This document shows, piece by piece, positions 1,878 through 20,852 of a stretch of 64,000 bases of DNA. Made by a program: the position numbers and the translations under genes. Origin of the DNA: Ramazzottius varieornatus (lineage: Eukaryota; Animalia; Tardigrada); assembly GCA_001949185.1 (NCBI GenBank), contig BDGG01000003.1:2835158-2899157 (forward strand), read 5' to 3'. The notes under the pieces are model-generated. The model did no database searches and was not told where the DNA came from. It worked only from the letters and a program-made list of their open reading frames with translations. Numbering within the stretch: the stretch's first letter is position 1; the number at the start of each line of letters is the position of its first letter.

Positions 1878-7571
<5,694 letters not shown>

Positions 7572-8415: not shown

Positions 8416-11400
8416 TCAGGAGCGCAGAACACCATCGGCTTTAAACTTCGAACCGATTCGCCCGAGCAGCCAGTAAGTAGAGTCGTCTGTCTGTAAACGA
8501 ATAAGATCAACGAAATCCAGAATCACCCAGTGTTGTTGTTTCAATGACGCAGTCAAGCTGAATAATAATGGTTCTTACGGTGCTCACGAAGTCTTCCGAG
8601 TCCCTCTTCTGCAGATCGAATCCACCCAGCTTGGTCAGAAGGTCTCTGCAGGCTTTACTGACGTGAATTCTTTGCGCTGGAAAAAAACACTATGGCACTT
8701 TCGTGTAGACTTTTAACATCATCTGGTCGTCATTACCTATTCCCGTTTGCTCCATGCGAGCAGCGTGCGTGACAGTGGGTCCGAACAGAGTGTACCTTGG
8801 CATCTTGGTTCCTACGACACCGGTCAAAACAGGGCCTGAAGGAGAAACGACGTTACCAAACAAGGAACTATAATTGAGCCGGAAGTCTTGAAAGGTCATT
8901 GATCGCCTTTCATGATGACCATCATATATCTACTATAAGTTGACGCCGAACTGTTGCGTGGTTTTCGGTAGGCTTGAGTTTACGTGACGATGTTTGGTCA
9001 TTTAACTGGGATCAAATTAGATTTACGAACCGGTATGGAGACCAATCCTCAGCTTGAGACGATCAGAAGGCAAATGGACAATTTTGAATTCGTGGACCGA
9101 CCGGAGAAAGATTAGTGACAGATCGGCAATTTCTTTTGCATGCTTCAAAAAGCCGAAAAAAAGTTAAGCTTGAACCTGGCACAATGGTAGTTAAATTTCT
9201 TTTCACGAACCTTATCTCCGTTACGGTGTGGTAAGCCCGAACAAACCTGCGAAGTTAAACTACTCACGTTTGGTCTGTCCAAATTCGTATTTGAGAAATG
9301 AGACCCGGAAGCATCACGTACCATGTAAGCGTCACCTACAACAGACATGTCACGATTTAGAGGAGCTCTTCGAAAATTCCAGGCCAATGCAACCGGCCCA
9401 GAAAAGGTATATTATTTGAACAGTTACCAATGGTTTCCACTTTGTAAACATCATGTGCATCGAGTTCCTCGTCGAACTCTGAATACAGAGTATTCAGCAT
9501 TTCCACGACTTGCATCGGGGTACTTTTCGCGCTGATCTTCGTGAAACCTATCCGCGAAATCTTTCGTTAAACCTTTCTGGTAAAACCGGTACTGTATATT
9601 TCTAACAATATTTACCCACGATATCCGAAAAATAGATCTATAGAAAAAAGAACAACTTGGATAATATTGAATGACCACGAGGATATAGAGGAACCTGCTG
9701 GCACACACCGTCACAGCGTCGTAGTGCTCGGCTGAGATGGCTTCACCGCGTTTCAGAGCATCGGAGATGGATGGCGGAAGCATTCCTGTGCATCATCGAA
9801 AGATTGAAGCAAACCCGCGGTGTGGTTGTCAGTACTTCGAGAGAAAAGATACTTACGATGTAATAAACCTTCCCCCTTCTTCTTCTCTGCCGAAATTTCT
9901 GTTGTCTGGTTAGCCAGTTGTTTAGCCGAGCTCCCAATGAATTTATTTATCCGCGTTACCGACAAAACGTACCAAAGGCACAATGGCGGACACACGATTA
10001 CCGAAAATATCAACAAAGCCAGAGCTCCAGAGAACTCGGCTTCCGCTGTACTGATCTAAAAACGAGAAAAAACGTGGAGACAAACCGCAATACTATTTCG
10101 TTGTCCTGCGGGGTGATGAGCAGGGTAACGCAAATGAAATCGCGAACCTGGAGGTGAAGAGCGCCGTTTACGGTAGTGACCAGATTGCCCTCAAGAGCAC
10201 TTATTGAGTCCATGTACGTTGTCATGTTTCCAAACCATAACTAAAAATAATAAGACCGTATTGAATTATCAGAATGGTTTTCTTTGGTGGGACCAATGAT
10301 CTTCTGCACCAGCCCTCTTGCAACATCCGCGCTCTGTGGAACGTTCGCCAATATTATGGGCCTCATCCTTTCAAACAGTAGGCTGGTGAGGTTCTCCTTC
10401 CCGGTTAGGATCTTCTTGTACAGTGATCTGCTGTCCTCCGAGTGATCGAAACATATCTCGAAAAAGGTCTTCGACTTAACATACACATCTGAAAGAAACG
10501 ATTATAAATGTCCATACAGTAAGCAGGTCCAAATTTTGTGACAGTATTGAACTCGGACTGCCTTACCGAAGAACATGTCGTGTTCATCCGGGGTACTGTA
10601 TCCTTTGGAAAAATATGCGCTTCCAAGAGCCCGCTGGATTCCTGTCCGTATGGATAAATAGAACGTCAGCAAATACTTTCGCGCAGATAGTTTCCACGAG
10701 TGGCGCGTAATCTTATCGTTACTGGTCGAAAGGGTGCGCCACTTGGAAAAACGATCTGCGTGAATTCATCTGCCGATGTTTCAGTTAATTCTTTTTATCA
10801 AACTTCATATTCAGGTTCACTTTGGTCATCGCATTCTCGCTTACCAAAGGCTTCTTTCGTGTTCGTGAACAGTTCGAGCGCGAACAGGTTCTTCCATAGT
10901 TCGCCGCCAATATCCCCACTAAGTTTCACATCCCTGTTCATCAATTTCAGCGCTCCTTCGATCAAGCGAGTGTACCAGACGACCTCCTCAATCGATGTGT
11001 GGTTGGATTTTCTATCAATCCTATGACGTAGCAAGCGATTCCTGAGAATAAAGAAAAAACGACAGACGGTTAGTCAACGTTTTTCATACGGACTAGATAA
11101 CAAAGTGTAGCTCCGGGCTACCGAAAATTGGCGGATGTTGACAGCCATTCCACATCATCCGGCTTTCCGGGCCACAAGTTTACGGCCGAGATCCCTTGCT
11201 CCGTGGACGCCCGAAGCTTAATCAAATTATTCCAAGTTACATTGCTGCTGCAAACACATCGCAAAGAGTGAAAAATTGAACAAATATGGGAAAAGAGGGA
11301 AAAATTGAACAAATATCCTGCCAGATCATAAAAGACACGGACCAGTCCTTTGAGTCGTATTTACTCACTTGTTCGAACTGAGAAACAAGCTGCAACAGGA

Positions 11401-11831
11401 AGAGTGATAAATGTTTCTTGTTGAAATAAAACAACCTAGAAGTGGAACACACCTGGTCATTCCACGTTCGCGTTGCAGTCTGGTGACGACCTCGCCGACC
11501 TGAACGCTCGCAGCTACCGCTGCGGCGGTGGACTTGGCAATTTGTTTTGCGTTCAGAGCAGTATACATAATTAGTCCACACTATAAAAAAAGAAGAATCA
11601 AATTAAGGTTGCCACATGAAAAACAAAACATTCAAACGAACAAACACTTACCTGGAAAAAGAGGACTGTCATCGGCACGCAAAGGACCAACACTAATTTC
11701 AGGAAACGCTTTTTCCGGATGGATGGCGAATCCTGAACAAGTTGTAAGAACTCCCTGGCAGTGGCATGACCAACACTCAGGCTGCTTTGAGCAGTACTTT
11801 GACCACGCGGAGAAGCATGACCGCGAACCAT
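8416..11831 (-). CDS. NIT-domain transmembrane guanylyl cyclase, copy A (catalytically atypical); start codon uncertain (11831, or further upstream near 12071)
   Basis: Spliced exons give TM1 ([18 protein letters not shown]), NIT motifs [20 protein letters not shown]|IQRALG and [12 protein letters not shown]2 ([23 protein letters not shown]), a coiled coil ending LLH/MLPPSI, and a cyclase domain with [49 protein letters not shown] and TYWLL. Stop at 8416. Confidence 0.85.
10682..10760. repeat. Hairpin/MITE-like element copy in an intron of NIT-GC copy A
   Basis: CGCAGATAGTTTCCACGAGTGGCGCG ... GTGCGCCACTTGGAAAAACGATCTGCG. Confidence 0.75.
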
Positions 11832-12789
11832 CTTTGCCAAAAGCGCCTTTGGTGATACTCGTTCCTGCTTCGCGCGGTCAAGCTGTTAAGTTCTTACAAA
11901 CAGTCGGACGCGGCGGACGACCTCACGAAACTTCTGTAGACTTGTACAGTGGTACAGACGATCATTGGGATGCACGAGACTTGTCGAAGTGCGCAATGCA
12001 ATCGATGTCGTGTAGGTTCGATGCCGTTTAGGACCTCCCCACAGGACCGACCCTGTAGGCGGGAATGGCATCTGCTAATAACTCCTGGGACTCTATAGAC
12101 GCATTCATGCAGCTAATTTGGTATCGTTTAGGTTGTTTTGTAAAACCGAGCGCTGTCACCCTGAAATTCCATTGAACCCTGTAACATGCTTTTTTTCAAG
12201 TCTGTCGGCGTTCCCACTGAGAGATGTCTACGGCCGCCCATCTTCCGCATCCGCTCGGCGACATCAGGTCTGTCAAATACCCAACGAAAACGACATCTAC
12301 AAGTGGCCAAAATCTAACTTTATTGGACGACAGTGCCCATCCTGTCATCATAGCACGTTACTAAACATCAGGCCATCCGAAATTTAAAGAACAAGGTAAT
12401 TAATTGTCAAGGCGGTTATCGGCCTTGATCTTTCGTGAAGGACTCATACGGTTCCCCGCAATTTGTTAGACCTCACGGCTCTTGACGAGAACTAATGTAC
12501 ACGTGAAACCGTTAGATTCTCTTTAGACTGCCAAGAAAATCAGCTTTTCCTGACTGTTCAAACGCCAACCGACTTTCCAGTTCGGACTCCAGAGAACTGG
12601 CGGATATCGTGCTACGGAGCTCTTGACCACTTCGAGAAGGCTCAAAAGAAAACGCTTGGCGACTTCTCCTGAATACCGATTGCCGTTCCGGCGAGGCAGC
12701 CCCGATGCACCCTAAATGTGCATTGCAGGAAAGCTTTTCCAGTGTGCGAGGTTTTCCCTGAGTCTATTTTCACCATGTGATCATGAGTA

Positions 12790-14370
12790 TCGAATCTCGC
12801 GTAAAGCGAGTTCAGAAACTCGATAACCTCGAAAGAGATCGAAGGTGTTAAAGTCAATGTAATCTCGATTATAAACGGGCGGCACTTGAAATTTTTGCCT
12901 TCATTACTGCAATACCGATACCGGCGTGAACGAACAGGAGGCCGGCAGTTTCGTGAGTTCAAGTACAACATCGTTATAAGCAATCAACAGAACAATTTGC
13001 ACACAAACTTGACTTGCAGACGGATTAATGGATTAACCACTACCTGCAATATATCATATCACAATCGTAGCATTCGGCACCAGACAATGGTCAAGTACGG
13101 TTCGAATGCCCAGCTCCCGTATCGGATATAATCGACAGTAAGGACAAGGTGACATTGCCTGGTCGTCTAAACGAAGTTTGATGAGGGCAGTCAGATCCAC
13201 CTCGGTGGGCTTGATGAGGTCAGCGATCCATACAGTCACTTCGGCGAACCAACCCTGCCGGAAAACTTGAAAGCTTAAATAGTCAACCAGAATGAAACTG
13301 TGAGTTTTGCAGTAGGTTTTTACTTGGTTGGTTTTGTTGCTCGTCATGTCGGGGACGTCTGTCATGCTGGAAGAATTTCCCCAGGTCGCGTCCACGAACT
13401 TCTGGATATTTGCGATTGATTCGATTATGTTCTTGTGCAAGCTTTCTGCTCCGCACAGAGTGCAGGCATGCTGGGCGAGCAGAACCGGCGTCTGAACTTG
13501 CGCCTGTGCAACAAAGGACAGCTAATATATGCGGATCGATTCAACATTTTTATATGTCTCTGTCAGTGAAAAGGACTGATCTAGTGGGGGGATAATTATC
13601 ACAACTTCATCGAGCTTATTCTGCAGCAAAGACCAGCATAAAACGGGAGCGTGCCGGTGTCGTTTCGGAATTCCGAAACTCGCTCCCAGTCAATCAGACT
13701 ATAGGGGAAAAAATCGGCTTACCAGCGTGAATGCACTGTCCAGGCCCCAGCACCGTAACTCTTACCTCAGTGATGATAATCAACATCATGGATCCCGGAA
13801 CGAAAGAGACTGAATTTAAGTTAGCAACTTTACGAAAGGCTGAAACAGTAAGAAGGCACCTTGTCACCCCTCTTTCCTTCTGTAAACAAGTGACCAGGGT
13901 CCCAATCTCCAGTCACTTCATTATTCGTATCTGTCGCAAGGTGCTGGCTCCTGACCACCTTGGATTATGAGCCCACACTACTCGTACAGAAATACAGCAA
14001 CTAAAACTATCATAGATAAGTTTGGACCATGCAGGAACGAAGCTTACTTCAATGAAGACCACTATCGTCGATACGGCGAAGATGACCAGCAGTCGGACCA
14101 ATCTGGCACGATGGACGGCGTTGTTATCTTTGGCGAAGTGCACCGGACCAGCCGTGTTTGCCTTCCACGTCGTGACGATCAGGTCCGGCAAGTTCTTCGG
14201 TGTCGTTCGGCGAACGCTGTCCAGTCTCGAAATGGTAGCCGGCACAGCCAAAGACAGTGTGGCACCGGACTGCCCACGGTCCGAAAGGACGGAGCCATTA
14301 AGAGACAGTATATGGACGAGACTGTCGCGACGAAATTTTCGGCACAGTGTCGAATGGAACCTTGTTCTGT
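12790..14370 (-). pseudogene. Decayed, internally deleted NIT-guanylyl cyclase copy B (derived from copy C)
   Basis: [22 protein letters not shown] matches copy [23 protein letters not shown]. The NIT exon EIGTLVTCLQKERGVT is out of frame because of small deletions. Only [13 protein letters not shown] (about 12828-12790) remains of the cyclase domain. Confidence 0.75.
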
Positions 14371-15334
14371 GTTTTAAACGAGCAGCAATTTAGAGGAAAA
14401 AGGGTTCCTGCGCTGTTATCTATAACTTCGGTTCGCGGATGGCAAAACGCGTTTTTCCAAGGGTATCAAACCAGCCTAAACCCCCTACCATGCAGCCTCC
14501 AACCGCTGTGCCATTTGGCAAATCCTAATGGCACAGCGGCACCTGGTAAAGATGCATAGCACACTGTACCGGTTGACACGCACCGATCTTATTACAGCTC
14601 AACTTAATCCATACGGTACCGCAACGGCAGCCTCTGCTCTTTTATTCGATCATCTCTCGTGAGTATAAAATTACAAATTTCCGTGACCATGTCTGAACGA
14701 AATGCAATCATATAATACCACAAGTATTTTTCTTGGAGATCCACAACGGCAATGAATTTTTCCAACTAATACGTGTTTTCAATTTCTCCAGACGTAATTG
14801 CGTCTCCTTCGTGATATTCCCCTAGCTTTAACTTCCAATTCCAACACGGAATAGCGCAACAGCTGTGGGACTCTCACAGTTTCACTCGCCGACGGGAAAT
14901 TTAACCTCCGACAAACAACTGATGTTGACCCCGCTCACTGGGACGGCATGCTTTGTGCTGTCGGAAAATGAAAACGTCGGCGAATGAAAGACGTCGGCAA
15001 ATAGGTACGGTTTGTGCAGTCAATTAAATTACAGAGATTGAGTTGGTACATCCGGCTTTGGTAACAGCAAGTCCCAGAATTCGAACTAGCTGTGTACGGC
15101 TGGCTCATCAAGGGACCAGCCAATCGCTCTGGCACCCAACTGCTTTTGTAGTTTGCAACAGATACTCTTCAACATGCTACAACAGCGAAAATTTACCCCG
15201 GGTCAAACTTCGCGGGAATTTGGCAAAATACAACTTACAGCAGGAGGACCTTCAATCCCAAGGGAACCTTGCAGCTGATATCACACTTTACGGAGCCAGA
15301 ACACGAACAGAAAGTCTCTGGCTGCGATGAATGA

Positions 15335-18300
15335 TCAGCTTTCCCACTCTTGCAGCGCCAGTCGAGCTTGCCGTTCGGCTTCGTGGAGGTCCACGGAGAA
15401 CCCGATGTCTGCTGACCGGATCAACCACCATGTCACCATGCTACCTTTTCCCTGCAACGACGACGGTTCTCGTACTGCGAAATAAAGTGACCAGTATATT
15501 ACAGCCTGAAATGTCACACCTTGACTTCTATATGGCCTCTACAGTCGAACTCGAAACCTCCCAGTTCGTCCAAGGCTCGTTTACAGGAATCGCTCAAGTG
15601 GATTCTCAAAGCTACGAGCCGACAAAGACAAAGTCGGTTAGATTGCCAATCAAACGAGTTTCTTAAGAAAGCAAGAAAGCAGAAGGCCTTACGTGCGCCA
15701 TGAGATTCCATGCGGGAAGCTGTGTTGACAGTGTCTCCAAATCTATCAAAAATACGGCAAGGCCATTCAACCGCGCAGGAAACCTTATCTGTCAAACAAA
15801 CAACCCACCGATTGTGAAAAAGAGTACAAGTTATTACTTACAGACAATACCGAGGCATCTTCAGGCCAATTACACCAGCCACACAGCTTCCTTCAAAGAA
15901 AGCAGTCGAATCAGTCATTGCAACGAAAATTGGTCAGTCTTGTGCCTATGCTCACCTGTGTGCATACCGATCCGGAGTAAAAGCTTTTTATGTGGCAGGT
16001 GTGGTATCACAAAGCTCTTGACCAGTTCCAAAAGGCTCAAAGAAAGATTGGCGACCTCGCCCGAGTGCCTGTTTCCATTGCGCATCGGCAAGCCCGAAGC
16101 AACCTGGAGCAAAAATACGATGGAACCATAAAAGTATCGGTGGTACGCCGCGGTAAACGCCTTACCATGTAAGCGTCTCCTGCAAAAAGTGAAACAGGTA
16201 TCTGGATCAGATTGATTTTCAGCTTACCTGACACCGTTTGCTCAAAAGAAAGTCAACATACCGATTGTCTCGACTTTGTAGACGTCGAACCGATCGATGA
16301 TGGAATCAAACTCCGTGTAGAGAGAGTTGAGAAACTCAATAACCTTCGTGGAGGCGAGCGAATAGACATAATATTAATATCTACGGCACACAAGGACCGT
16401 AAAGGATGCGCACTTTACTCAAATCGTATTAGTACCTGCGTGGACGAGCAGGAAGCAGAAAGCTTCGTAAAATCCACAACATCGCTACGTAAACAAAACA
16501 TTGTTTTGTTAATTTCGGCGTGCGGCATGGAAATGGAAGCTGATTACCTAAAATAGATTGTGACGGAATCGTAATATTCGGCTTCAACTTGGCGGTTCTT
16601 CTTCAGTGCATCGGCGACCGAGGGTGGAAGCATCTGGTACAGAAGTCTTTCCGTGCGTTTCTTCTCAAAGTTCAGCTCGACGGTCTGCTGACCGACGTGC
16701 TCGGCGTAGTTTCCGATCAACTGGGCCATCTTGCTCACGGAGTAGACATACCAGGTACAGAGTAGCGGGCACACGACTATGATAAATATCAATATCGCGA
16801 TTGCCAGGTTGAAGTCATGACGCGCAGCAGCGGCCTATTGAATATTGCTAGATATTGACAGAACCAATTCCCTGGCGGATCTAACGTGCAAAGGACGAGC
16901 AACAATGTTGAAGGTCCTTAAACAACGATCCAGTTCAGTGCATTTGCCCAGCCTACAGGATATACCTGTTCATCCAGATGAAGCAGGATGAAGGTTGTTA
17001 AATCCAACTCGGTCGGTCCGATAACGTCGTCCATCAGGACTGTCATATTGGCGAACCAACTCTGCAAGAAAGAAAATTAATAAAATTATGAATTAGATCA
17101 AGGACATGGAAAAAGAGACGTGCTTGAGCTTTTGCCTGGTCCGTCACGTTGTTCTTTCCATTGGTCAAGTCTGTGCCATTGCCGCGGTCTACTATTAGGG
17201 AAGAGTTATCCACAGATCGGACGTTTCGGAACAGCTTCGCGGATTTCCGGATGTCAATGACCGGCTCACTGTAATGATCCAGCAGACTTTGGTACAAGTC
17301 TTTAGTTCGGGCTGAATGCAGGAACGCAGCATCGAGCAGAACGCGAGCTTGTACTTCCGCCTCTGCAATCAAACAGAACTAATATGAGAACCGAGTCATA
17401 AATCACCAGCGCGTATTTATGAAGCTGCCTGTCAGGTTGGGTATCTCCGTAGGGGACTTGCCATTGAACCATAACTGCTCTTCGGAAGTATGATATCCTC
17501 GCGCGTAGTAATTTCCTCCCAACGCACGTTGCAAACCTTCCGATGAACTCGGGTTAGAACCAGAGTATTGCCCAACAAGAACAAAGTTAAACACTTCCGG
17601 TATATGATAATACTTCGTCATCCATGAGATGGGAGACGGGCAAGGCAAACGTAAGAGATCATTCTGACGAGTCATATATTTTCTCATTGTTATTGGCTGG
17701 AGGGGTGCGCCACTCAATAATTTTACACGTTTTGTTTGCCCAGCTCCCAAATTGTACCTAAAAAGAATCTTTATTGAAAAGTCATGATTAAAAATGCTAA
17801 CCAATTGTGTCCTTGGCCTGGAGTATGAGCTCGTAAGCCACGAAATATCTCCAAAGGTCACCACCGTTGTCTCCACCCATATAGATGTCGCGGTTGACCC
17901 ATTTGATCAAGATCGTGATGGCTGCGGTGTACCAACGAAGCTCACTCAAAGATTGGGTGGTGGAGTTAATTGTCCGCCGGTAGTCCAACAGAAAATTACT
18001 ACAAACGACAAAAGTGCAAATCCAGCTTATCGACTTGCTAAGGGCGTATGTAGAACGGAAGTTATTAGAGCTATATTGGACACGTCCATTAATCTTGGCC
18101 TTGCGATTGGAGAGTACCGATCGAAAAATGAGCACTACGATACCAACCGGAAGTCTTCCCCAGTTGCGAAATGTTTGTCGTCCTGTGGTCCTCCGCGCCA
18201 TTTGGTCACGTGTTCGAACGCCAGGTCGGTGTTATTACGGAATTTCAACACTCGCTCCCAGGCAATGGGACTAGGAACAAAAGTGGACTGATAATTATAA

Positions 18301-19210
18301 TGCAAATCCTTTCCGCTGTGTCTAATTTCATTATTGCACCGGAGGGCACTCAAGCATTGGATAAGTGCTCCATGTCGAATATCGCTCACCTCAGTGACGT
18401 TAAGTAGATACTACGGGATTCCGAATGGAAAGAAAAAATGAGTGTAAGAAAAAAACTGATGAAAACCCATTCAATCGGAAGTTGGAAACAATACAGGAAA
18501 AAAACATACCTTGTCATCCCTCTTTCCTTCTGTAAACTTGTCACCAGCGACCCAATTTGTAACGCAGCCATTATTCCACTGTTCGTCTCCGCTACCAGCT
18601 GCTGGCTTCTGACGGCCTTCGTAATAATTAGTCCACACTAAAAGAAAAGTTTTAATTGAAGCTGGGCACACAAAACGTACAGAAAGCATATTCTCAAGTG
18701 GCGCACGTTTTCATTGTCACTGGTTGGGACGGTGCGCCACTCGAGGTAACCATACTAAACGTTGTGTGTGCCCGGTTTCAAGTATTCAGGGTAAACTTGG
18801 ACCATTGAGGGACTGAAATTTACTTCGACGAAGACCACGATCATCGGTACAGCGAAGATGACCAGCAGTCGGACCACTCTTGCTCGATGAGTCGCACTGT
18901 TGTCTTTCGAGAAATTTCGGAATTCGTTCTCCATCCCATCGGGCATGCTGTGGACACTGTTTCGCGTGGGTTCACGGAGAGCAATAGTTGTCGAAGGTTC
19001 GGCTTTTCGCAGTGCATGGGCCACATCCGGTAAGTTTTCTTTTGCTGGTCTCCGGCCGGTGTTTAGTCGAGAGGTGGTAGTTAAAGTAGGCGACGAAACT
19101 GTACCATGGTCCGAGCGAAGGGACCCATGAGGCGAAGGTGTGGGCGAAACCTTGGCCGATCTGTTCGACGGAATACTGAATGAAACTTTGTTCCGCATTG
19201 TCAAGCACAT
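15335..19210 (-). CDS. NIT-domain transmembrane guanylyl cyclase, copy C (canonical catalytic residues)
   Basis: TM1 [19 protein letters not shown]; NIT motifs [15 protein letters not shown] and KDTIG|LQRALGG; TM2 [18 protein letters not shown]; coiled coil [18 protein letters not shown]; cyclase [63 protein letters not shown]. Confidence 0.9.
17670..17718. repeat. Partial hairpin element copy in an intron of NIT-GC copy C
   Basis: TTCTCATTGTTATTGGCTGGAGGGGTGCGCCACTC, i.e. the family loop plus right arm. Confidence 0.6.
18690..18753. repeat. Hairpin element copy in the first intron of NIT-GC copy C
   Basis: CTCAAGTGGCGCAC-GTTTTCATTGTCACTGGTTGGGACG-GTGCGCCACTCGAG. Confidence 0.75.
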
Positions 19211-20453
19211 GGAAAAACTAATTCACACAAAATGAAGCCGATAAAATGATAGCCGACGTAATACGCCCAAGACCCATTATGACAAATTTTTGCGTGGTTG
19301 GCGGACGAAATCTGTCGCCAGCGAGAGGTTACTGTATGTGGAACTATGATGAGTGCGAACATGTTTTCGCGGTATCCTACGATTCGTTGTTCACGTGAGC
19401 GGCTCAGTGCGATCCTTGAAAAAGATGAGGAGTGCTACTTAGCACGCATCAGTCTCAACAAAGTCCCGGAAATCCATACAACCAACCCCGCACTGATACC
19501 TTTCACTTTCCCTCCTCCTCTTTCCGTGAAATGCGCATCTACTGCGGGCGTGCACTGCATAGTGCCTCCTGTTCGGTCGTTTGGTTCTTGCGGTGGCATA
19601 AAGATCCATCTCGATGGAATCCCGGAAACGGACAAAAGACTTATTCTACTGATCCATGTTTCCGTACTTCGCGTGCGTACACTTTGCTGCGTTGGTTCTT
19701 CGTCGGTCTTTTTGCGTTCGCCAAGAGATACAAAAGACAAAGCGCCACCTAGCGGTGAAATCGATTTCCCGCAGCGGATACGCCAAACAGTCCAAGCCTT
19801 TTCCCGCCTCTGTGGATTCGCGCTCTGCGATTCTGAAGCAATCAGAACTCTGGATGGCCCCGGACCCCGGATGACTAATTGATTAAATTACAGAGCTTGA
19901 TTCGGCATCGATCCAGATCAGCGATATTGAAACACGACCAGAGGTACGTATTTGCGTTGGATGAATACCGGATGCGAAACGTCAGACTCAGACAGACTGT
20001 GCGCAGTGTCGTAACACGCCGGTGCAAAGGACCCACAAAGGCCATCACACCAACAACAAATTTGCACTCCGCCTTATCGAAAGTGTTCTGCTACAAGCCG
20101 ACGATTCTTTGCTAACCTTGACCTTACAAAAGCTCCCTCCGCATTCCGCCTTAATCCGGCTCTAGCCACAGACCAAATATCTTTCAGAAATGAAAGAAGA
20201 AAATTTGCTGACGCAGCTGGCAAATATTTTAGTAAATATTACAGCCTGCAATCTGTCATTTGCACCCGAGAGCGATTGTCAGATTCCGGGTTTCTTCCGT
20301 CTGGTTTCAACTATAAAATGACAAGGAGTATTCCCTCTCTCGTCCGCTTTCTACTTGCCTTCCGGATACGTCGAGTCTCTCATAGCAGACAACTCTGTCG
20401 AAACTTCAATTTGCCTTAGAATTGCATTTCGCCATCAGAAGAAAGACACCATC

Positions 20454-20852
20454 ATGGACATTTCCTGCCTAAACTTGACCATTTTCACGATCGCAATGAC
20501 ATTCCTGCTCACGCTTTGCAACGGACAAAGAGCAGGCATCTGTCCAAGTGGAGGACCCGGAAATGGAGCAGCCCAGTGCAACTACGACAACATGTGCCCT
20601 TATCCACAAAAGTGTTGTCCGATCGGAGCAACAGGCTTTTCGTACTGCGCAAACCCAATCGGCGGTAACACGGGTTACACCAACGTCATTGTGGGGACTC
20701 CCAACTACAAAAGAGGCTATTGTCCCAACCGGCAATACTTCGTGAACTGCTACCGAGCCACTTACTACTGCAACAACGACTACAACTGTGCAGGAAACCT
20801 CAAATGCTGTTCTAATGGATGTGGTAGACAGTGCACTTCTCCCTACTTTTAG
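20454..20852 (+). CDS. Secreted double-WAP (four-disulfide core) domain protein, intronless
   Basis: Signal-peptide-like start MDISCLNLTIFTIAMTFLLTLCNG, followed by RAGICP..C....CPYPQKCC and KRGYCP..C..CNNDYNCAGNLKCCSNGCGRQC. Confidence 0.85.
   Translation: MDISCLNLTIFTIAMTFLLTLCNGQRAGICPSGGPGNGAAQCNYDNMCPYPQKCCPIGATGFSYCANPIGGNTGYTNVIVGTPNYKRGYCPNRQYFVNCYRATYYCNNDYNCAGNLKCCSNGCGRQCTSPYF

What the first reader, a model, noticed from the sequence alone, without database searches (positions are those of the whole stretch)
8416..19210. Tandem cluster of membrane NIT-domain guanylyl cyclases (candidate nitrate/nitrite/NO receptors)
Seen: three co-oriented genes. The two intact ones have the architecture cytoplasmic N-tail / TM1 / NIT domain / TM2 / coiled coil / cyclase, with no kinase-homology or H-NOX domain. 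The NIT call rests on the paired motifs LQ(R/K)ERG and K(E/D)xxGxQRA plus the WF..MT helix. Known: NIT domains sense nitrate/nitrite in bacterial NasR and chemoreceptors, and NIT-GCs are described in a few animals (placozoans; Platynereis, where one mediates NO-dependent cGMP). Inference: the two-TM topology places NIT outside the cell, as in a bacterial chemoreceptor, giving a heme-independent cell-surface NOx-to-cGMP sensor that is expanding locally in this lineage. The second NIT motif has Q where the family usually has E (QRA vs ERA) in both genes, which could alter the ligand.
Basis: partly seen in the sequence, partly recalled or inferred. Interest (0 to 1): 0.82.

Follow-up and report, generated by a model that had tools for sequence, protein, structure and literature searches.

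The report
Tardigrade NIT-domain guanylyl cyclase gene pair
Two neighbouring genes of the tardigrade Ramazzottius varieornatus, with a dead copy between them, encode membrane guanylyl cyclases whose outer sensor is a nitrate/nitrite-type NIT domain; this animal receptor family is already described, so these are new members, and one of the two has lost half of its catalytic residues.

Summary
On the minus strand of 8416-19210 lie two intact spliced genes and a decayed copy. I call them gene A (19210-15335, 17 exons, 709 aa), gene B (11831-8416, 18 exons, 613 aa) and pseudogene C (about 14305-12598). The window is Ramazzottius varieornatus, locus tags RvY_07449 and RvY_07447.

Both intact genes read cytoplasmic tail, TM1, NIT, TM2, short coiled coil, class III cyclase. 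Neither has a kinase-homology or H-NOX domain.

NIT is supported three ways:
- The window's own public partial products pass Pfam NIT (25.9 and 55.8 bits; cut-off 24.9).
- Full-length orthologues score 84-88 bits.
- A fold model of gene B's product matches NasR (Z 14.5, 239 residues).

Three corrections:
- NIT-GCs are widespread and published (Moroz 2020; Jokura preprint), including Drosophila CG33958.
- A and B are an old pair, each with orthologues in other tardigrade genera. The only recent duplicate is dead, so the cluster is not expanding.
- B keeps both metal-binding aspartates but lacks the catalytic Asn and the KGKG lysine loop, as do its orthologues. It probably works only as a partner in a mixed dimer.

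Ligand and dimer partner are untested. Verdict: new members of a known kind.

The parts
15335..19210 (-). Gene A (public locus tag RvY_07449): intact NIT-GC with a canonical cyclase. 17 exons, 709 aa. Exons: 19210-18824, 18637-18510, 18410-18390, 18270-18148, 17998-17802, 17536-17462, 17362-17148, 17061-16966, 16834-16548, 16484-16436, 16343-16262, 16179-16166, 16103-15956, 15890-15842, 15742-15693, 15611-15520, 15451-15335.
   Evidence: Exon table with splice dinucleotides and phases. Colinear with the P. metropolitanus orthologue P0006/P0014. Exons 1-4 are 100% identical to GAU95930.1. The end of exon A6 (donor at 17148) is the least certain boundary; an alternative in-frame donor lies further downstream.
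18623..18865 (-). Gene A TM1 ([19 protein letters not shown]). It is split by intron 1 (18865-18824 plus 18637-18623) and preceded by the basic stretch HRARVVR.
   Evidence: Kyte-Doolittle 19-residue mean of 2.78 on P0001 residues 116-134.
16966..18637 (-). Gene A NIT domain, exons A2 to A7. Motif 1 LQKERG at 18535-18518, motif 2 LQRALG at 17534-17517, WFANMT at 17058-17041. Five N-x-S/T sequons.
   Evidence: Pfam NIT: exon A4 alone scores 18 bits on profile positions 74-132; public product P0001 scores 25.9 bits against a cut-off of 24.9; orthologue P0006 scores 83.8 bits. Motif columns; sequons.
16736..16813 (-). Gene A TM2 ([26 protein letters not shown]), with the tardigrade-specific CPxLC motif.
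   Evidence: Kyte-Doolittle mean of 2.91; alignment.
16604..16711 (-). Gene A coiled-coil / signalling helix between TM2 and the cyclase. There is no kinase-homology domain.
   Evidence: Pfam HNOBA C-terminal helix: 28.3 bits, E 1.5e-6, profile positions 181-216.
15335..16594 (-). Gene A class III cyclase domain and C-terminal tail, with the full catalytic set: [49 protein letters not shown].
   Evidence: Sequence read exon by exon. Pfam Guanylate_cyc hits on exon pieces. Alignment.
12598..14305 (-). Pseudogene C: a decayed partial duplicate of gene A, lying where tag RvY_07448 would fall by numbering. Recognisable pieces: exon-1-like 14305-14048, exon-2-like 13964-13862, exon-3-like 13694-13656, exon-6-like (weak, 25% identity) 13503-13327, exon-7-like 13251-13159, exon-9-like 12966-12925, exon-10-like 12827-12786, exon-12-like 12708-12598.
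   Evidence: tblastx and exon-by-exon tblastn. The exon-2-like part has an in-frame stop (IMK*LEIG) and a frame change. Counterparts of exons 4, 5, 8, 11 and 13-16 were not found. It is closer to A (58-79% identity in the well-preserved pieces) than to B.
8416..11831 (-). Gene B (public locus tag RvY_07447): intact NIT-GC with a half-degenerate cyclase. 18 exons, 613 aa. Exons: 11831-11652, 11580-11453, 11389-11369, 11247-11122, 11041-10845, 10641-10567, 10488-10310, 10240-10148, 10055-9857, 9785-9709, 9637-9616, 9547-9428, 9335-9322, 9246-9211, 9142-9031, 8835-8737, 8676-8588, 8490-8416.
   Evidence: Exon table, all GT-AG. Junctions B1 to B6 agree with the public product P0070 = RvY_07447-2, apart from its retained intron. 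Colinear with P0008/P0068.
10148..11580 (-). Gene B NIT domain, exons B2 to B7. Motif 1 LQRERG at 11478-11461, motif 2 IQRALG at 10639-10622, WFGNMT at 10237-10220. TM1 lies just upstream (11696-11652 plus 11580-11569).
   Evidence: Pfam NIT: 55.8 bits on P0070; exon B4 20.2 bits and exon B5 12.9 bits at colinear profile positions. The AlphaFold model of P0070 matches NasR 4AKK with Z 14.5, 239 residues and rmsd 4.2, against 10.2 for the next hit. Foldseek also ranks 4AKK first, probability 1.00.
9957..10022 (-). Gene B TM2 ([22 protein letters not shown]).
   Evidence: Kyte-Doolittle mean of 2.32.
8416..9785 (-). Gene B cyclase domain. Both metal-binding Asp are kept: IYFSDIV on the 22-nt microexon 9637-9616 and DAYM on the 14-nt microexon 9335-9322. 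The C2/beta-side residues are lost.
8750..8785 (-). Degenerate catalytic motif of gene [13 protein letters not shown], where the canonical motif is [12 protein letters not shown]. The catalytic Asn is replaced by Thr, and the preceding specificity Cys by Thr. The KGKG loop is also absent, at the exon B16/B17 junction (8588/8490).
   Evidence: The Asn is likewise replaced in all B-type relatives (P0008, P0068, P0069 and the paralogue in L004) and the Arg in all but gene B; the KGKG loop is absent in P0008 and P0068. P0069 is truncated before the loop and it was not read in L004.

Best explanation
The locus holds two functional genes of the animal NIT-GC family in the tardigrade Ramazzottius varieornatus, with a dead partial duplicate of the first gene between them.

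Each protein is a two-pass membrane receptor. A basic N-terminal tail and the C-terminal cyclase face the cytoplasm. A NasR-type NIT domain of two four-helix bundles lies between TM1 and TM2 on the extracytoplasmic side. A coiled coil of about 45 residues links TM2 directly to a class III cyclase.

Shown here: the architecture, NIT homology at both profile and fold level, retention of the two arginines that NasR needs to respond to nitrate, guanylyl-type specificity residues and a complete catalytic set in gene A, and an old A/B split.

Inferred: binding of nitrate, nitrite or an NO-derived species at the arginine pair changes the packing of the NIT helices. This is passed through TM2 and the coiled coil to the cyclase dimer and raises cGMP synthesis, as reported for Platynereis NIT-GC1.

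Gene B keeps the two metal-binding aspartates. It has lost the catalytic Asn, the KGKG lysine loop and, in this species, the specificity Cys, and its orthologues show the same kind of loss. Like the soluble guanylyl cyclase alpha subunit, it therefore most likely contributes to one active site only in a mixed dimer with a complete subunit such as gene A.
For: Organism and gene identity: P0001 = GAU95930.1 (RvY_07449-4) and P0070 = RvY_07447-2 are encoded in the window.

Gene models: complete in-frame models with canonical splice sites.

NIT:
- Pfam 25.9 bits for P0001 and 55.8 bits for P0070, both over the 24.9 cut-off. Orthologues score 83.8 (P0006), 86.9 (P0008), 74.2 (P0068) and 88.3 (P0069) bits.
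- Exon-level hits fall at colinear profile positions.
- The fold model matches NasR with Z 14.5 over 239 residues, 4 units above the next hit.

Cyclase: Guanylate_cyc and the HNOBA-tail helix are the only other domains found.

Topology: two hydrophobic helices, basic residues before TM1, and 5 (A) and 4 (B) sequons between the TMs against 1 each in the cyclase part.

Ligand site:
- LQxERG matches NasR LQCE49R50G, and G(L/I)QRALG matches NasR GQE175R176AL.
- R50A and R176A abolish the nitrate response of a NasR-based sensor.

Family: the closest full-length relatives are arthropod proteins carrying PF08376 plus PF00211, E about 1e-108. The architecture and the NO-donor response of Platynereis NIT-GC1 are published.

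B-type degeneracy is conserved in three genera and in a second paralogue of this genome.
Against: - No ligand, activity or dimer data exist for these proteins.
- No RNA evidence was available here. The public gene models stop inside the NIT region (319 and 344 aa), so a full-length transcript joining NIT and cyclase exons is inferred from exon phases and from full-length RefSeq orthologues, not observed.
- The spliced proteins themselves were never searched or folded as one piece.
- Gene A is catalytically complete, so the A/B pair is not strictly complementary, and A could work alone.
- In Paramacrobiotus the A-type and B-type genes sit on different scaffolds, so adjacency is not conserved.
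- Gene B retains the Arg of the ASRME motif, and some residual homodimer activity cannot be excluded.
- Q in place of NasR E175 may change what is bound.
Confidence: 0.8

Rival explanations
1. Gene B is not a heterodimer partner of gene A. It may be a catalytically silent or weak NIT receptor that acts alone as a homodimeric pseudo-cyclase, scaffold or dominant-negative regulator. Or it may pair with a different cyclase encoded elsewhere in the genome.
For: Gene A has every catalytic residue and needs no partner. A-type and B-type genes lie on different scaffolds in Paramacrobiotus. The genome holds at least four more NIT-GC loci and many other receptor cyclases that could be partners.
Against: The two metal-binding aspartates are strictly kept in all B-type proteins, while the Asn and (where it could be read) the KGKG loop are lost in each, and the Arg in all but gene B. 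That is the pattern expected for a subunit still supplying one half of an active site, and not for a dead enzyme. B is under enough constraint to stay intact across three genera.
Confidence: 0.3
2. The NIT domains do not sense nitrate, nitrite or NO. They bind another small anion or ligand, or serve only as a structural ectodomain, and the cyclase is regulated from inside the cell.
For: No animal NIT domain has a defined ligand. The Platynereis assay could not separate NO from its oxidation products. The tardigrade motif has Q where NasR has E175. Platynereis NIT-GC2 appears to act tonically in phototransduction. The arthropod relatives lack the second arginine altogether.
Against: Both arginines whose loss abolishes the NasR nitrate response are kept in all A-type and B-type tardigrade proteins. 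The cGMP response of Platynereis NIT-GC1 to an NO donor requires its NIT domain. The genome has two NOS loci, so an endogenous NOx source exists.
Confidence: 0.2
3. The TM/NIT exons and the cyclase exons belong to separate transcripts. On this reading the locus encodes stand-alone membrane NIT proteins plus separate cyclases, as the truncated public models might suggest.
For: The public models RvY_07449-4 (319 aa) and RvY_07447-2 (344 aa) end within the NIT region.
Against: Both public models end by reading into an intron, and they carry retained-intron segments that the fold model leaves disordered (pLDDT below 50 at residues 105-128 and 325-344). All downstream exons continue in phase with canonical splice sites to a single stop. 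No start codon or promoter-sized gap separates the NIT exons from the TM2 exon (introns are 60-265 nt). RefSeq orthologues in Paramacrobiotus are full-length NIT plus cyclase proteins with the same exon order.
Confidence: 0.05

Closest known systems
Animal NIT-domain guanylyl cyclases (NIT-GCs): placozoan NIT-GCs (Moroz et al. 2020, PMC7400543) and Platynereis NIT-GC1/2 (Jokura et al., bioRxiv 10.1101/2023.08.02.551600)
   Same: TM, NIT (PF08376), TM, short coiled coil and class III cyclase (PF00211). No kinase-homology or H-NOX domain. Multi-gene families. The two conserved NIT arginines are present, as reported for placozoans.
   Different: These are tardigrade members, which I found described in no paper of the library. 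They form their own clade against the arthropod NIT-GCs (100/100). TM2 is four residues longer and carries a CPxLC motif. One subtype (B) has a conserved half-degenerate catalytic site.
Arthropod NIT-GCs, e.g. Drosophila melanogaster CG33958 (Q1EC29)
   Same: Closest full-length relatives of the A-type orthologue: 33-37% identity over about 84% of its length, E down to 1e-108, with the same three Pfam domains.
   Different: The arthropod proteins read GIS(S/M/T)VYG where the tardigrade proteins read G(L/I)QRALG. They therefore lack the second NasR-type arginine. Most of them have a canonical cyclase.
NasR NIT domain (Klebsiella oxytoca, PDB 4AKK), a bacterial nitrate/nitrite receptor
   Same: Same double four-helix-bundle fold (Z 14.5, 239 residues aligned). 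The E-R of helix 1 and the R of helix 5 are conserved; R50 and R176 are needed for the nitrate response.
   Different: About 16-18% sequence identity. NasR is soluble and coupled to an ANTAR RNA-binding domain, not membrane-bound and not coupled to a cyclase. Q replaces E175.
Heterodimeric guanylyl cyclases: soluble GC alpha/beta, and nematode ODR-1/DAF-11
   Same: Gene B resembles an alpha/C1-type subunit: the metal-binding aspartates are kept and the catalytic Asn is replaced by Thr. From memory, soluble GC alpha1 has the same Asn-to-Thr replacement.
   Different: Here the sensor is an extracellular NIT domain, not a haem H-NOX domain. The neighbour A is fully competent rather than the complementary half. 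No dimer data exist.

Membership tests
Animal NIT-GC family | NIT domain (Pfam PF08376) over the curated threshold | tested here: met
   Window-encoded public products: P0001 (gene A) 25.9 bits and P0070 (gene B) 55.8 bits, cut-off 24.9. Orthologues 74-88 bits. Single exons are sub-threshold but colinear with the profile.
Animal NIT-GC family | NIT fold: two four-helix bundles as in NasR | tested here: met
   AlphaFold model of P0070 (mean pLDDT 74) against 4AKK: VIA-align Z 14.5, rmsd 4.2, 239 residues, next hit 10.2. Foldseek ranks 4AKK first with E 0.054 and probability 1.00. Tested for gene B only.
Animal NIT-GC family | NIT flanked by two transmembrane helices | tested here: met
   Hydropathy peaks of 2.3-2.9 before and after the NIT exons in both genes and in the orthologues. 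No dedicated topology predictor was available.
Animal NIT-GC family | C-terminal class III cyclase joined to TM2 by a short coiled coil, without a kinase-homology domain | tested here: met
   Pfam Guanylate_cyc on exon pieces plus the HNOBA C-terminal helix. About 45 residues lie between TM2 and the cyclase. The orthologues have no other domain.
Animal NIT-GC family | Groups with metazoan NIT-GCs rather than with other receptor cyclases | tested here: met
   The A-type orthologue's best hits all carry PF08376 plus PF00211; kinase-homology receptor cyclases match only over the cyclase third. In per-exon trees the tardigrade clade is well separated from the arthropod NIT-GCs.
Animal NIT-GC family | Guanylyl-specific residues (Glu, Cys) and a full catalytic set (two Asp, Asn, Arg, Lys loop) | tested here: met
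   This row is for gene A. All are present: [39 protein letters not shown]. The residue roles come from general knowledge of class III cyclases.
Animal NIT-GC family (as a self-sufficient cyclase) | Full catalytic set in gene B | tested here: not met
   Asn is replaced by Thr, Cys by Thr, Asp of FGD by Pro, and the KGKG loop is absent. Both metal Asp, the specificity Glu and the Arg are kept. B-type relatives show the same kind of loss.
Animal NIT-GC family | cGMP production that depends on NO, nitrite or nitrate and requires the NIT domain | not testable with these tools
   Shown only for Platynereis NIT-GC1.
NasR-type nitrate/nitrite-binding NIT site | Arg equivalents of NasR R50 and R176 | tested here: met
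   LQ(K/R)ERG and G(L/I)QRALG in A, B and all tardigrade A/B-type proteins. NasR residues were read from PMC7496416 and from the primer sequences in PMC9581486. The correspondence is by motif; no residue-level structural superposition was obtained.
NasR-type nitrate/nitrite-binding NIT site | Glu equivalent of NasR E175 before the second Arg | tested here: not met
   Q in A, B, P0006, P0008, P0068, P0069 and L004. A paralogue of another clade in the same genome (L001) has E-R.
Obligate heterodimeric class III cyclase (soluble GC alpha/beta type) | One subunit keeps the C1/alpha-side residues and lacks the C2/beta-side residues | tested here: met
   Gene B and its relatives.
Obligate heterodimeric class III cyclase (soluble GC alpha/beta type) | A partner subunit with the complementary defect, and physical heterodimerisation | tested here: inconclusive
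   Gene A is complete rather than complementary. Dimerisation cannot be tested with these tools.

The most novel reading that the evidence does not exclude
The B-type proteins are dedicated alpha-like subunits. With a complete A-type subunit they would form asymmetric NIT-GC receptors carrying two different NIT ectodomains and a single active site. This would be an arrangement conserved across the eutardigrade genera sampled here, and the first heteromeric NIT-GC. Such a receptor could compare or integrate two NOx species, for example nitrite and nitrate or NO, and would have a second, non-catalytic nucleotide pocket available for regulation.
Probability: 0.35. Interest if true: 0.55.

Novelty: new member of a known kind. 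Interest (0 to 1): 0.35.

Why it matters
NIT-GCs are a recently recognised, haem-independent route from nitrogen oxides to cGMP in animals, and their ligand and mechanism are still open. The tardigrade pair adds three things.

- **Compact genes that keep the NasR site.** Both NasR-critical arginines are retained, whereas the arthropod relatives, including the Drosophila gene, have lost the second one. That makes the tardigrade proteins better candidates than the fly protein for testing direct nitrate or nitrite binding.
- **A conserved half-dead subtype.** It suggests that some NIT-GCs work as mixed dimers.
- **Corrected gene models.** The public annotation splits both genes and misses microexons of 14-22 nt that encode catalytic residues.

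None of this changes the picture of the family. It is a solid, ordinary extension of it.

Tried and rejected
I therefore could not fetch the genomic neighbourhoods of the Paramacrobiotus and Hypsibius orthologues. Adjacency there rests only on the contig lengths given.
- **Sequence search against the Protein Data Bank.** P0001 found nothing and P0070 found only chance hits with E near 1. The NasR link came from the fold comparison instead.
- **Supplements of the genome paper** are not held, so I have no expression values for RvY_07447 to RvY_07449.
- **Whole-genome six-frame scan with the NIT profile**. It did not report the window's own genes, because their NIT exons are too short singly. It is therefore not a count of NIT genes.
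I repeated the step with coordinates only. One Pfam call failed on a stop codon in a locus reference, and I dropped that piece.
- **A possible conserved cassette exon or RNA.** Intron 4 of A and of B share a block that I considered as one of these. I rejected both readings. There is no Rfam match, the P0014 isoform insert lies elsewhere, and the block is a genome-wide 45-nt repeat.
- **Recent local expansion** was rejected by the per-exon trees.
- Exons were handled singly by reference. In some searches they were aligned as separate fragments and only overlaid on one display line.
- The contig is not human.

Full report
**What is there.** I read splice sites base by base and checked phases numerically. 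This gave two complete gene models.

- Gene A runs 19210-15335: 17 exons, 709 codons. All acceptors are AG and all donors GT, except one GC donor after exon A5.
- Gene B runs 11831-8416: 18 exons, 613 codons, all GT-AG.
- Introns are 60-265 nt.
- Several exons have identical lengths in both genes (128, 21, 197, 75 and 14 nt), so the two genes share an ancestral structure.
- Microexons of 14, 21 and 22 nt encode DAYM, part of the first NIT helix, and IYFSDIV.

Between the two genes lies a third copy at about 14305-12598. Its exon-2-like part has an in-frame stop and a frame change. It has no counterpart of exons 4, 5, 8, 11 and 13-16, so it is a pseudogene derived from gene A.

**Organism and public models.** A search with exon A4 alone (65 aa) found only 13 proteins among 1.84 billion representatives.

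- The best hit, 100% identical, is GAU95930.1, 'hypothetical protein RvY_07449-4' of Ramazzottius varieornatus.
- Gene B's first exons are RvY_07447-2 (P0070).
- The assembly size, 55.84 Mb in 200 contigs, fits the published genome of 55.8 Mb in 199 scaffolds plus the mitochondrion.

Both public products are truncated (319 and 344 aa) and carry retained introns. The contig is not human.

**Method limit.** The evidence comes from three sources: single exons given by reference, the two public partial products that the window itself encodes, and natural full-length orthologues.

**NIT domain.**
- Single exons give sub-threshold but colinear hits to Pfam NIT. A4 scores 18 bits on profile positions 74-132, B4 scores 20.2 bits on 75-135, and B5 scores 12.9 bits on 132-157.
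- The window-encoded products pass the curated cut-off of 24.9 bits: P0001 at 25.9 and P0070 at 55.8.
- Full-length relatives from Paramacrobiotus metropolitanus and Hypsibius exemplaris score 74-88 bits for NIT and 157-210 bits for Guanylate_cyc. The window exons are colinear with them at up to 65-75% identity in the best-conserved exons.
- An AlphaFold model of P0070 has mean pLDDT 74. The retained-intron and read-through parts are disordered, as expected.
- Its best match in the Protein Data Bank is NasR (4AKK), the solved NIT structure I know of. Foldseek ranks it first with probability 1.00 and E 0.054. VIA-align gives Z 14.5, rmsd 4.2 Å and 239 aligned residues covering both four-helix bundles. 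The next hit scores 10.2 and covers a single bundle.

**Rest of the architecture.**
- Hydropathy gives one strong helix before and one after the NIT exons in both genes.
- Basic residues precede TM1 (HRARVVR in A, IRKKRFLK in B).
- The cyclase must face the cytoplasm, so NIT faces outward or into a lumen.
- N-x-S/T sequons number 5 (A) and 4 (B) in the inter-TM part against one each in the cyclase part. This is weak support.
- Between TM2 and the cyclase lie only about 45 residues. They match the terminal helix of HNOBA (28.3 bits).
- No kinase-homology or H-NOX domain appears in the exons or in the orthologues.

**Ligand-site residues.** NasR has LQC-E49-R50-G in helix 1 and GQ-E175-R176-AL in helix 5. 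I read these from the mutagenesis primers in PMC9581486 and from the text of PMC7496416. R50A and R176A abolish the nitrate response of a NasR-based sensor.

- All tardigrade A-type and B-type proteins have LQ(K/R)ERG and G(L/I)QRALG.
- A paralogue of another clade in the same genome (L001) has E-R at that place.
- The arthropod NIT-GCs, Drosophila CG33958 included, read GIS(S/M/T)VYG there and so lack the second arginine.
- Moroz et al. report both arginines in placozoans, so the tardigrade state is probably the older one.

**Cyclase.** Gene A has every residue expected of a guanylyl cyclase: two metal Asp, the specificity Glu and Cys, Asn, Arg and the KGKG loop. The residue roles come from general knowledge of class III cyclases.

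Gene B keeps both Asp, the Glu and the Arg. It reads [19 protein letters not shown], so Asn and Cys are both replaced by Thr, and it has no KGKG loop.

The same kind of loss is seen in both Paramacrobiotus B-type proteins, in the Hypsibius one and in a second B-like locus of this genome, L004. Asn becomes A, V, R or T, and Arg becomes T, Q, W or H. The KGKG loop is absent in the two full-length Paramacrobiotus proteins; the Hypsibius protein is truncated before it and it was not read in L004. The aspartates never change.

This is the pattern of an alpha/C1-type subunit. An earlier first-stage note (s1-812314) proposed it, and my comparison with orthologues supports the 'half-site' part. The proposed partner, gene A, is complete rather than complementary, and the partnership itself is untested. 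In Paramacrobiotus the two types lie on different scaffolds.

**Family and history.**
- The A-type orthologue's nearest full-length relatives are arthropod proteins with NIT, the HNOBA tail and a cyclase, at E down to 1e-108. Kinase-homology receptor cyclases match only the cyclase third.
- Per-exon maximum-likelihood trees put gene A with the Paramacrobiotus A-type (support 92/99). They put gene B with the Paramacrobiotus and Hypsibius B-types (96/98). All tardigrade sequences stand against the arthropod ones (100/100 and 100/99).
- The A/B duplication therefore predates these genera. Only pseudogene C is younger. 'Expanding locally' is not supported.
- Elsewhere the genome has at least four more NIT-GC loci, two NOS loci and several H-NOX loci. 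NIT-GCs thus sit beside the canonical NO pathway and do not replace it.

**What is known already.**
- Moroz et al. 2020 described TM-NIT-TM-cyclase proteins in placozoans and many bilaterian phyla.
- Jokura et al. found them in most animal phyla. They showed that Platynereis NIT-GC1 makes cGMP in response to an NO donor only if its NIT domain is present.
- UniRef already labels RvY_07447-2 as a protein containing a nitrate/nitrite-sensing domain.
- I found no paper on tardigrade NIT-GCs. The genome paper notes only an unexplained expansion of guanylate cyclases.

**Verdict.** The genes are new members of a known family. The local-expansion claim is wrong and the rarity claim is overstated. The most interesting residue of the finding is the conserved half-degenerate B subtype, together with the retention of the NasR arginine pair that arthropods have lost.

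Noticed in passing
window 18741-18697 (-), 17714-17665 (-), 10743-10693 (-); genome-wide: A 45-nt element with 10-nt inverted ends (AGTGGCGCAC ... GTGCGCCACT) and a semi-conserved middle sits in intron 1 and intron 4 of gene A and in intron 4 of gene B. With exact 8-nt ends it occurs at 2584 places in the 55.8 Mb genome, against 4 for the reversed control. Intact copies fold as hairpins (z -4.8 and -4.0), and there is no Rfam match. It looks like a very abundant miniature palindromic-ended repeat.
   Followed up: partly
window 20355-20852 (+): A single-exon ORF of 165 aa with a hydrophobic N-terminal stretch and two WAP four-disulfide-core domains (Pfam WAP 60.9 bits). It lies just upstream of gene A on the other strand.
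   Followed up: partly
window 6789-7571 (-): A 260-aa ORF with several hydrophobic stretches directly downstream of gene B has no Pfam match.
   Followed up: partly
window 9637-9616, 9335-9322, 11389-11369, 16179-16166, 18410-18390 (-): Microexons of 14-22 nt encode catalytic or conserved residues (IYFSDIV, DAYM, part of NIT helix 1). The public R. varieornatus models retain the neighbouring introns. The RefSeq model P0008 of Paramacrobiotus lacks the IYFSDIVGF segment, probably because a microexon was missed.
   Followed up: partly
window 16775-16761 and 9992-9978 (-), TM2 of genes A and B: TM2 of all tardigrade A-type and B-type proteins carries a conserved C-P-(L/P)-L-C motif and is four residues longer than in arthropod NIT-GCs. 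Its meaning is unknown.
   Followed up: no
alignment (P0015-P0062, incl. Drosophila CG33958 = P0024): Arthropod NIT-GCs have GIS(S/M/T)VYG at the second NIT motif and so lack the arginine equivalent to NasR R176, which the tardigrade proteins keep.
   Followed up: partly
L001 (G000:C3:258000-266000), L002 (C1:2836500-2845000), L003 (C2:1809500-1818000), L004 (C11:1401500-1409500): Four further NIT-GC loci in the same genome. L001-L003 have a canonical [13 protein letters not shown] motif, and L001 encodes most of NIT, TM2 and the start of the cyclase on one 353-aa exon. L004 is B-like with a degenerate motif (VGETMTYAQHME).
   Followed up: partly
window 17462/17461 (-): Intron 5 of gene A uses a GC donor (G|GCAAGT), whereas the paralogous intron of gene B uses GT.
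   Followed up: no
G000:C11:364515-366061 and G000:C2:1761850-1763574: Two nitric oxide synthase loci, and at least seven H-NOX (soluble guanylyl cyclase type) loci elsewhere in the genome.
   Followed up: no
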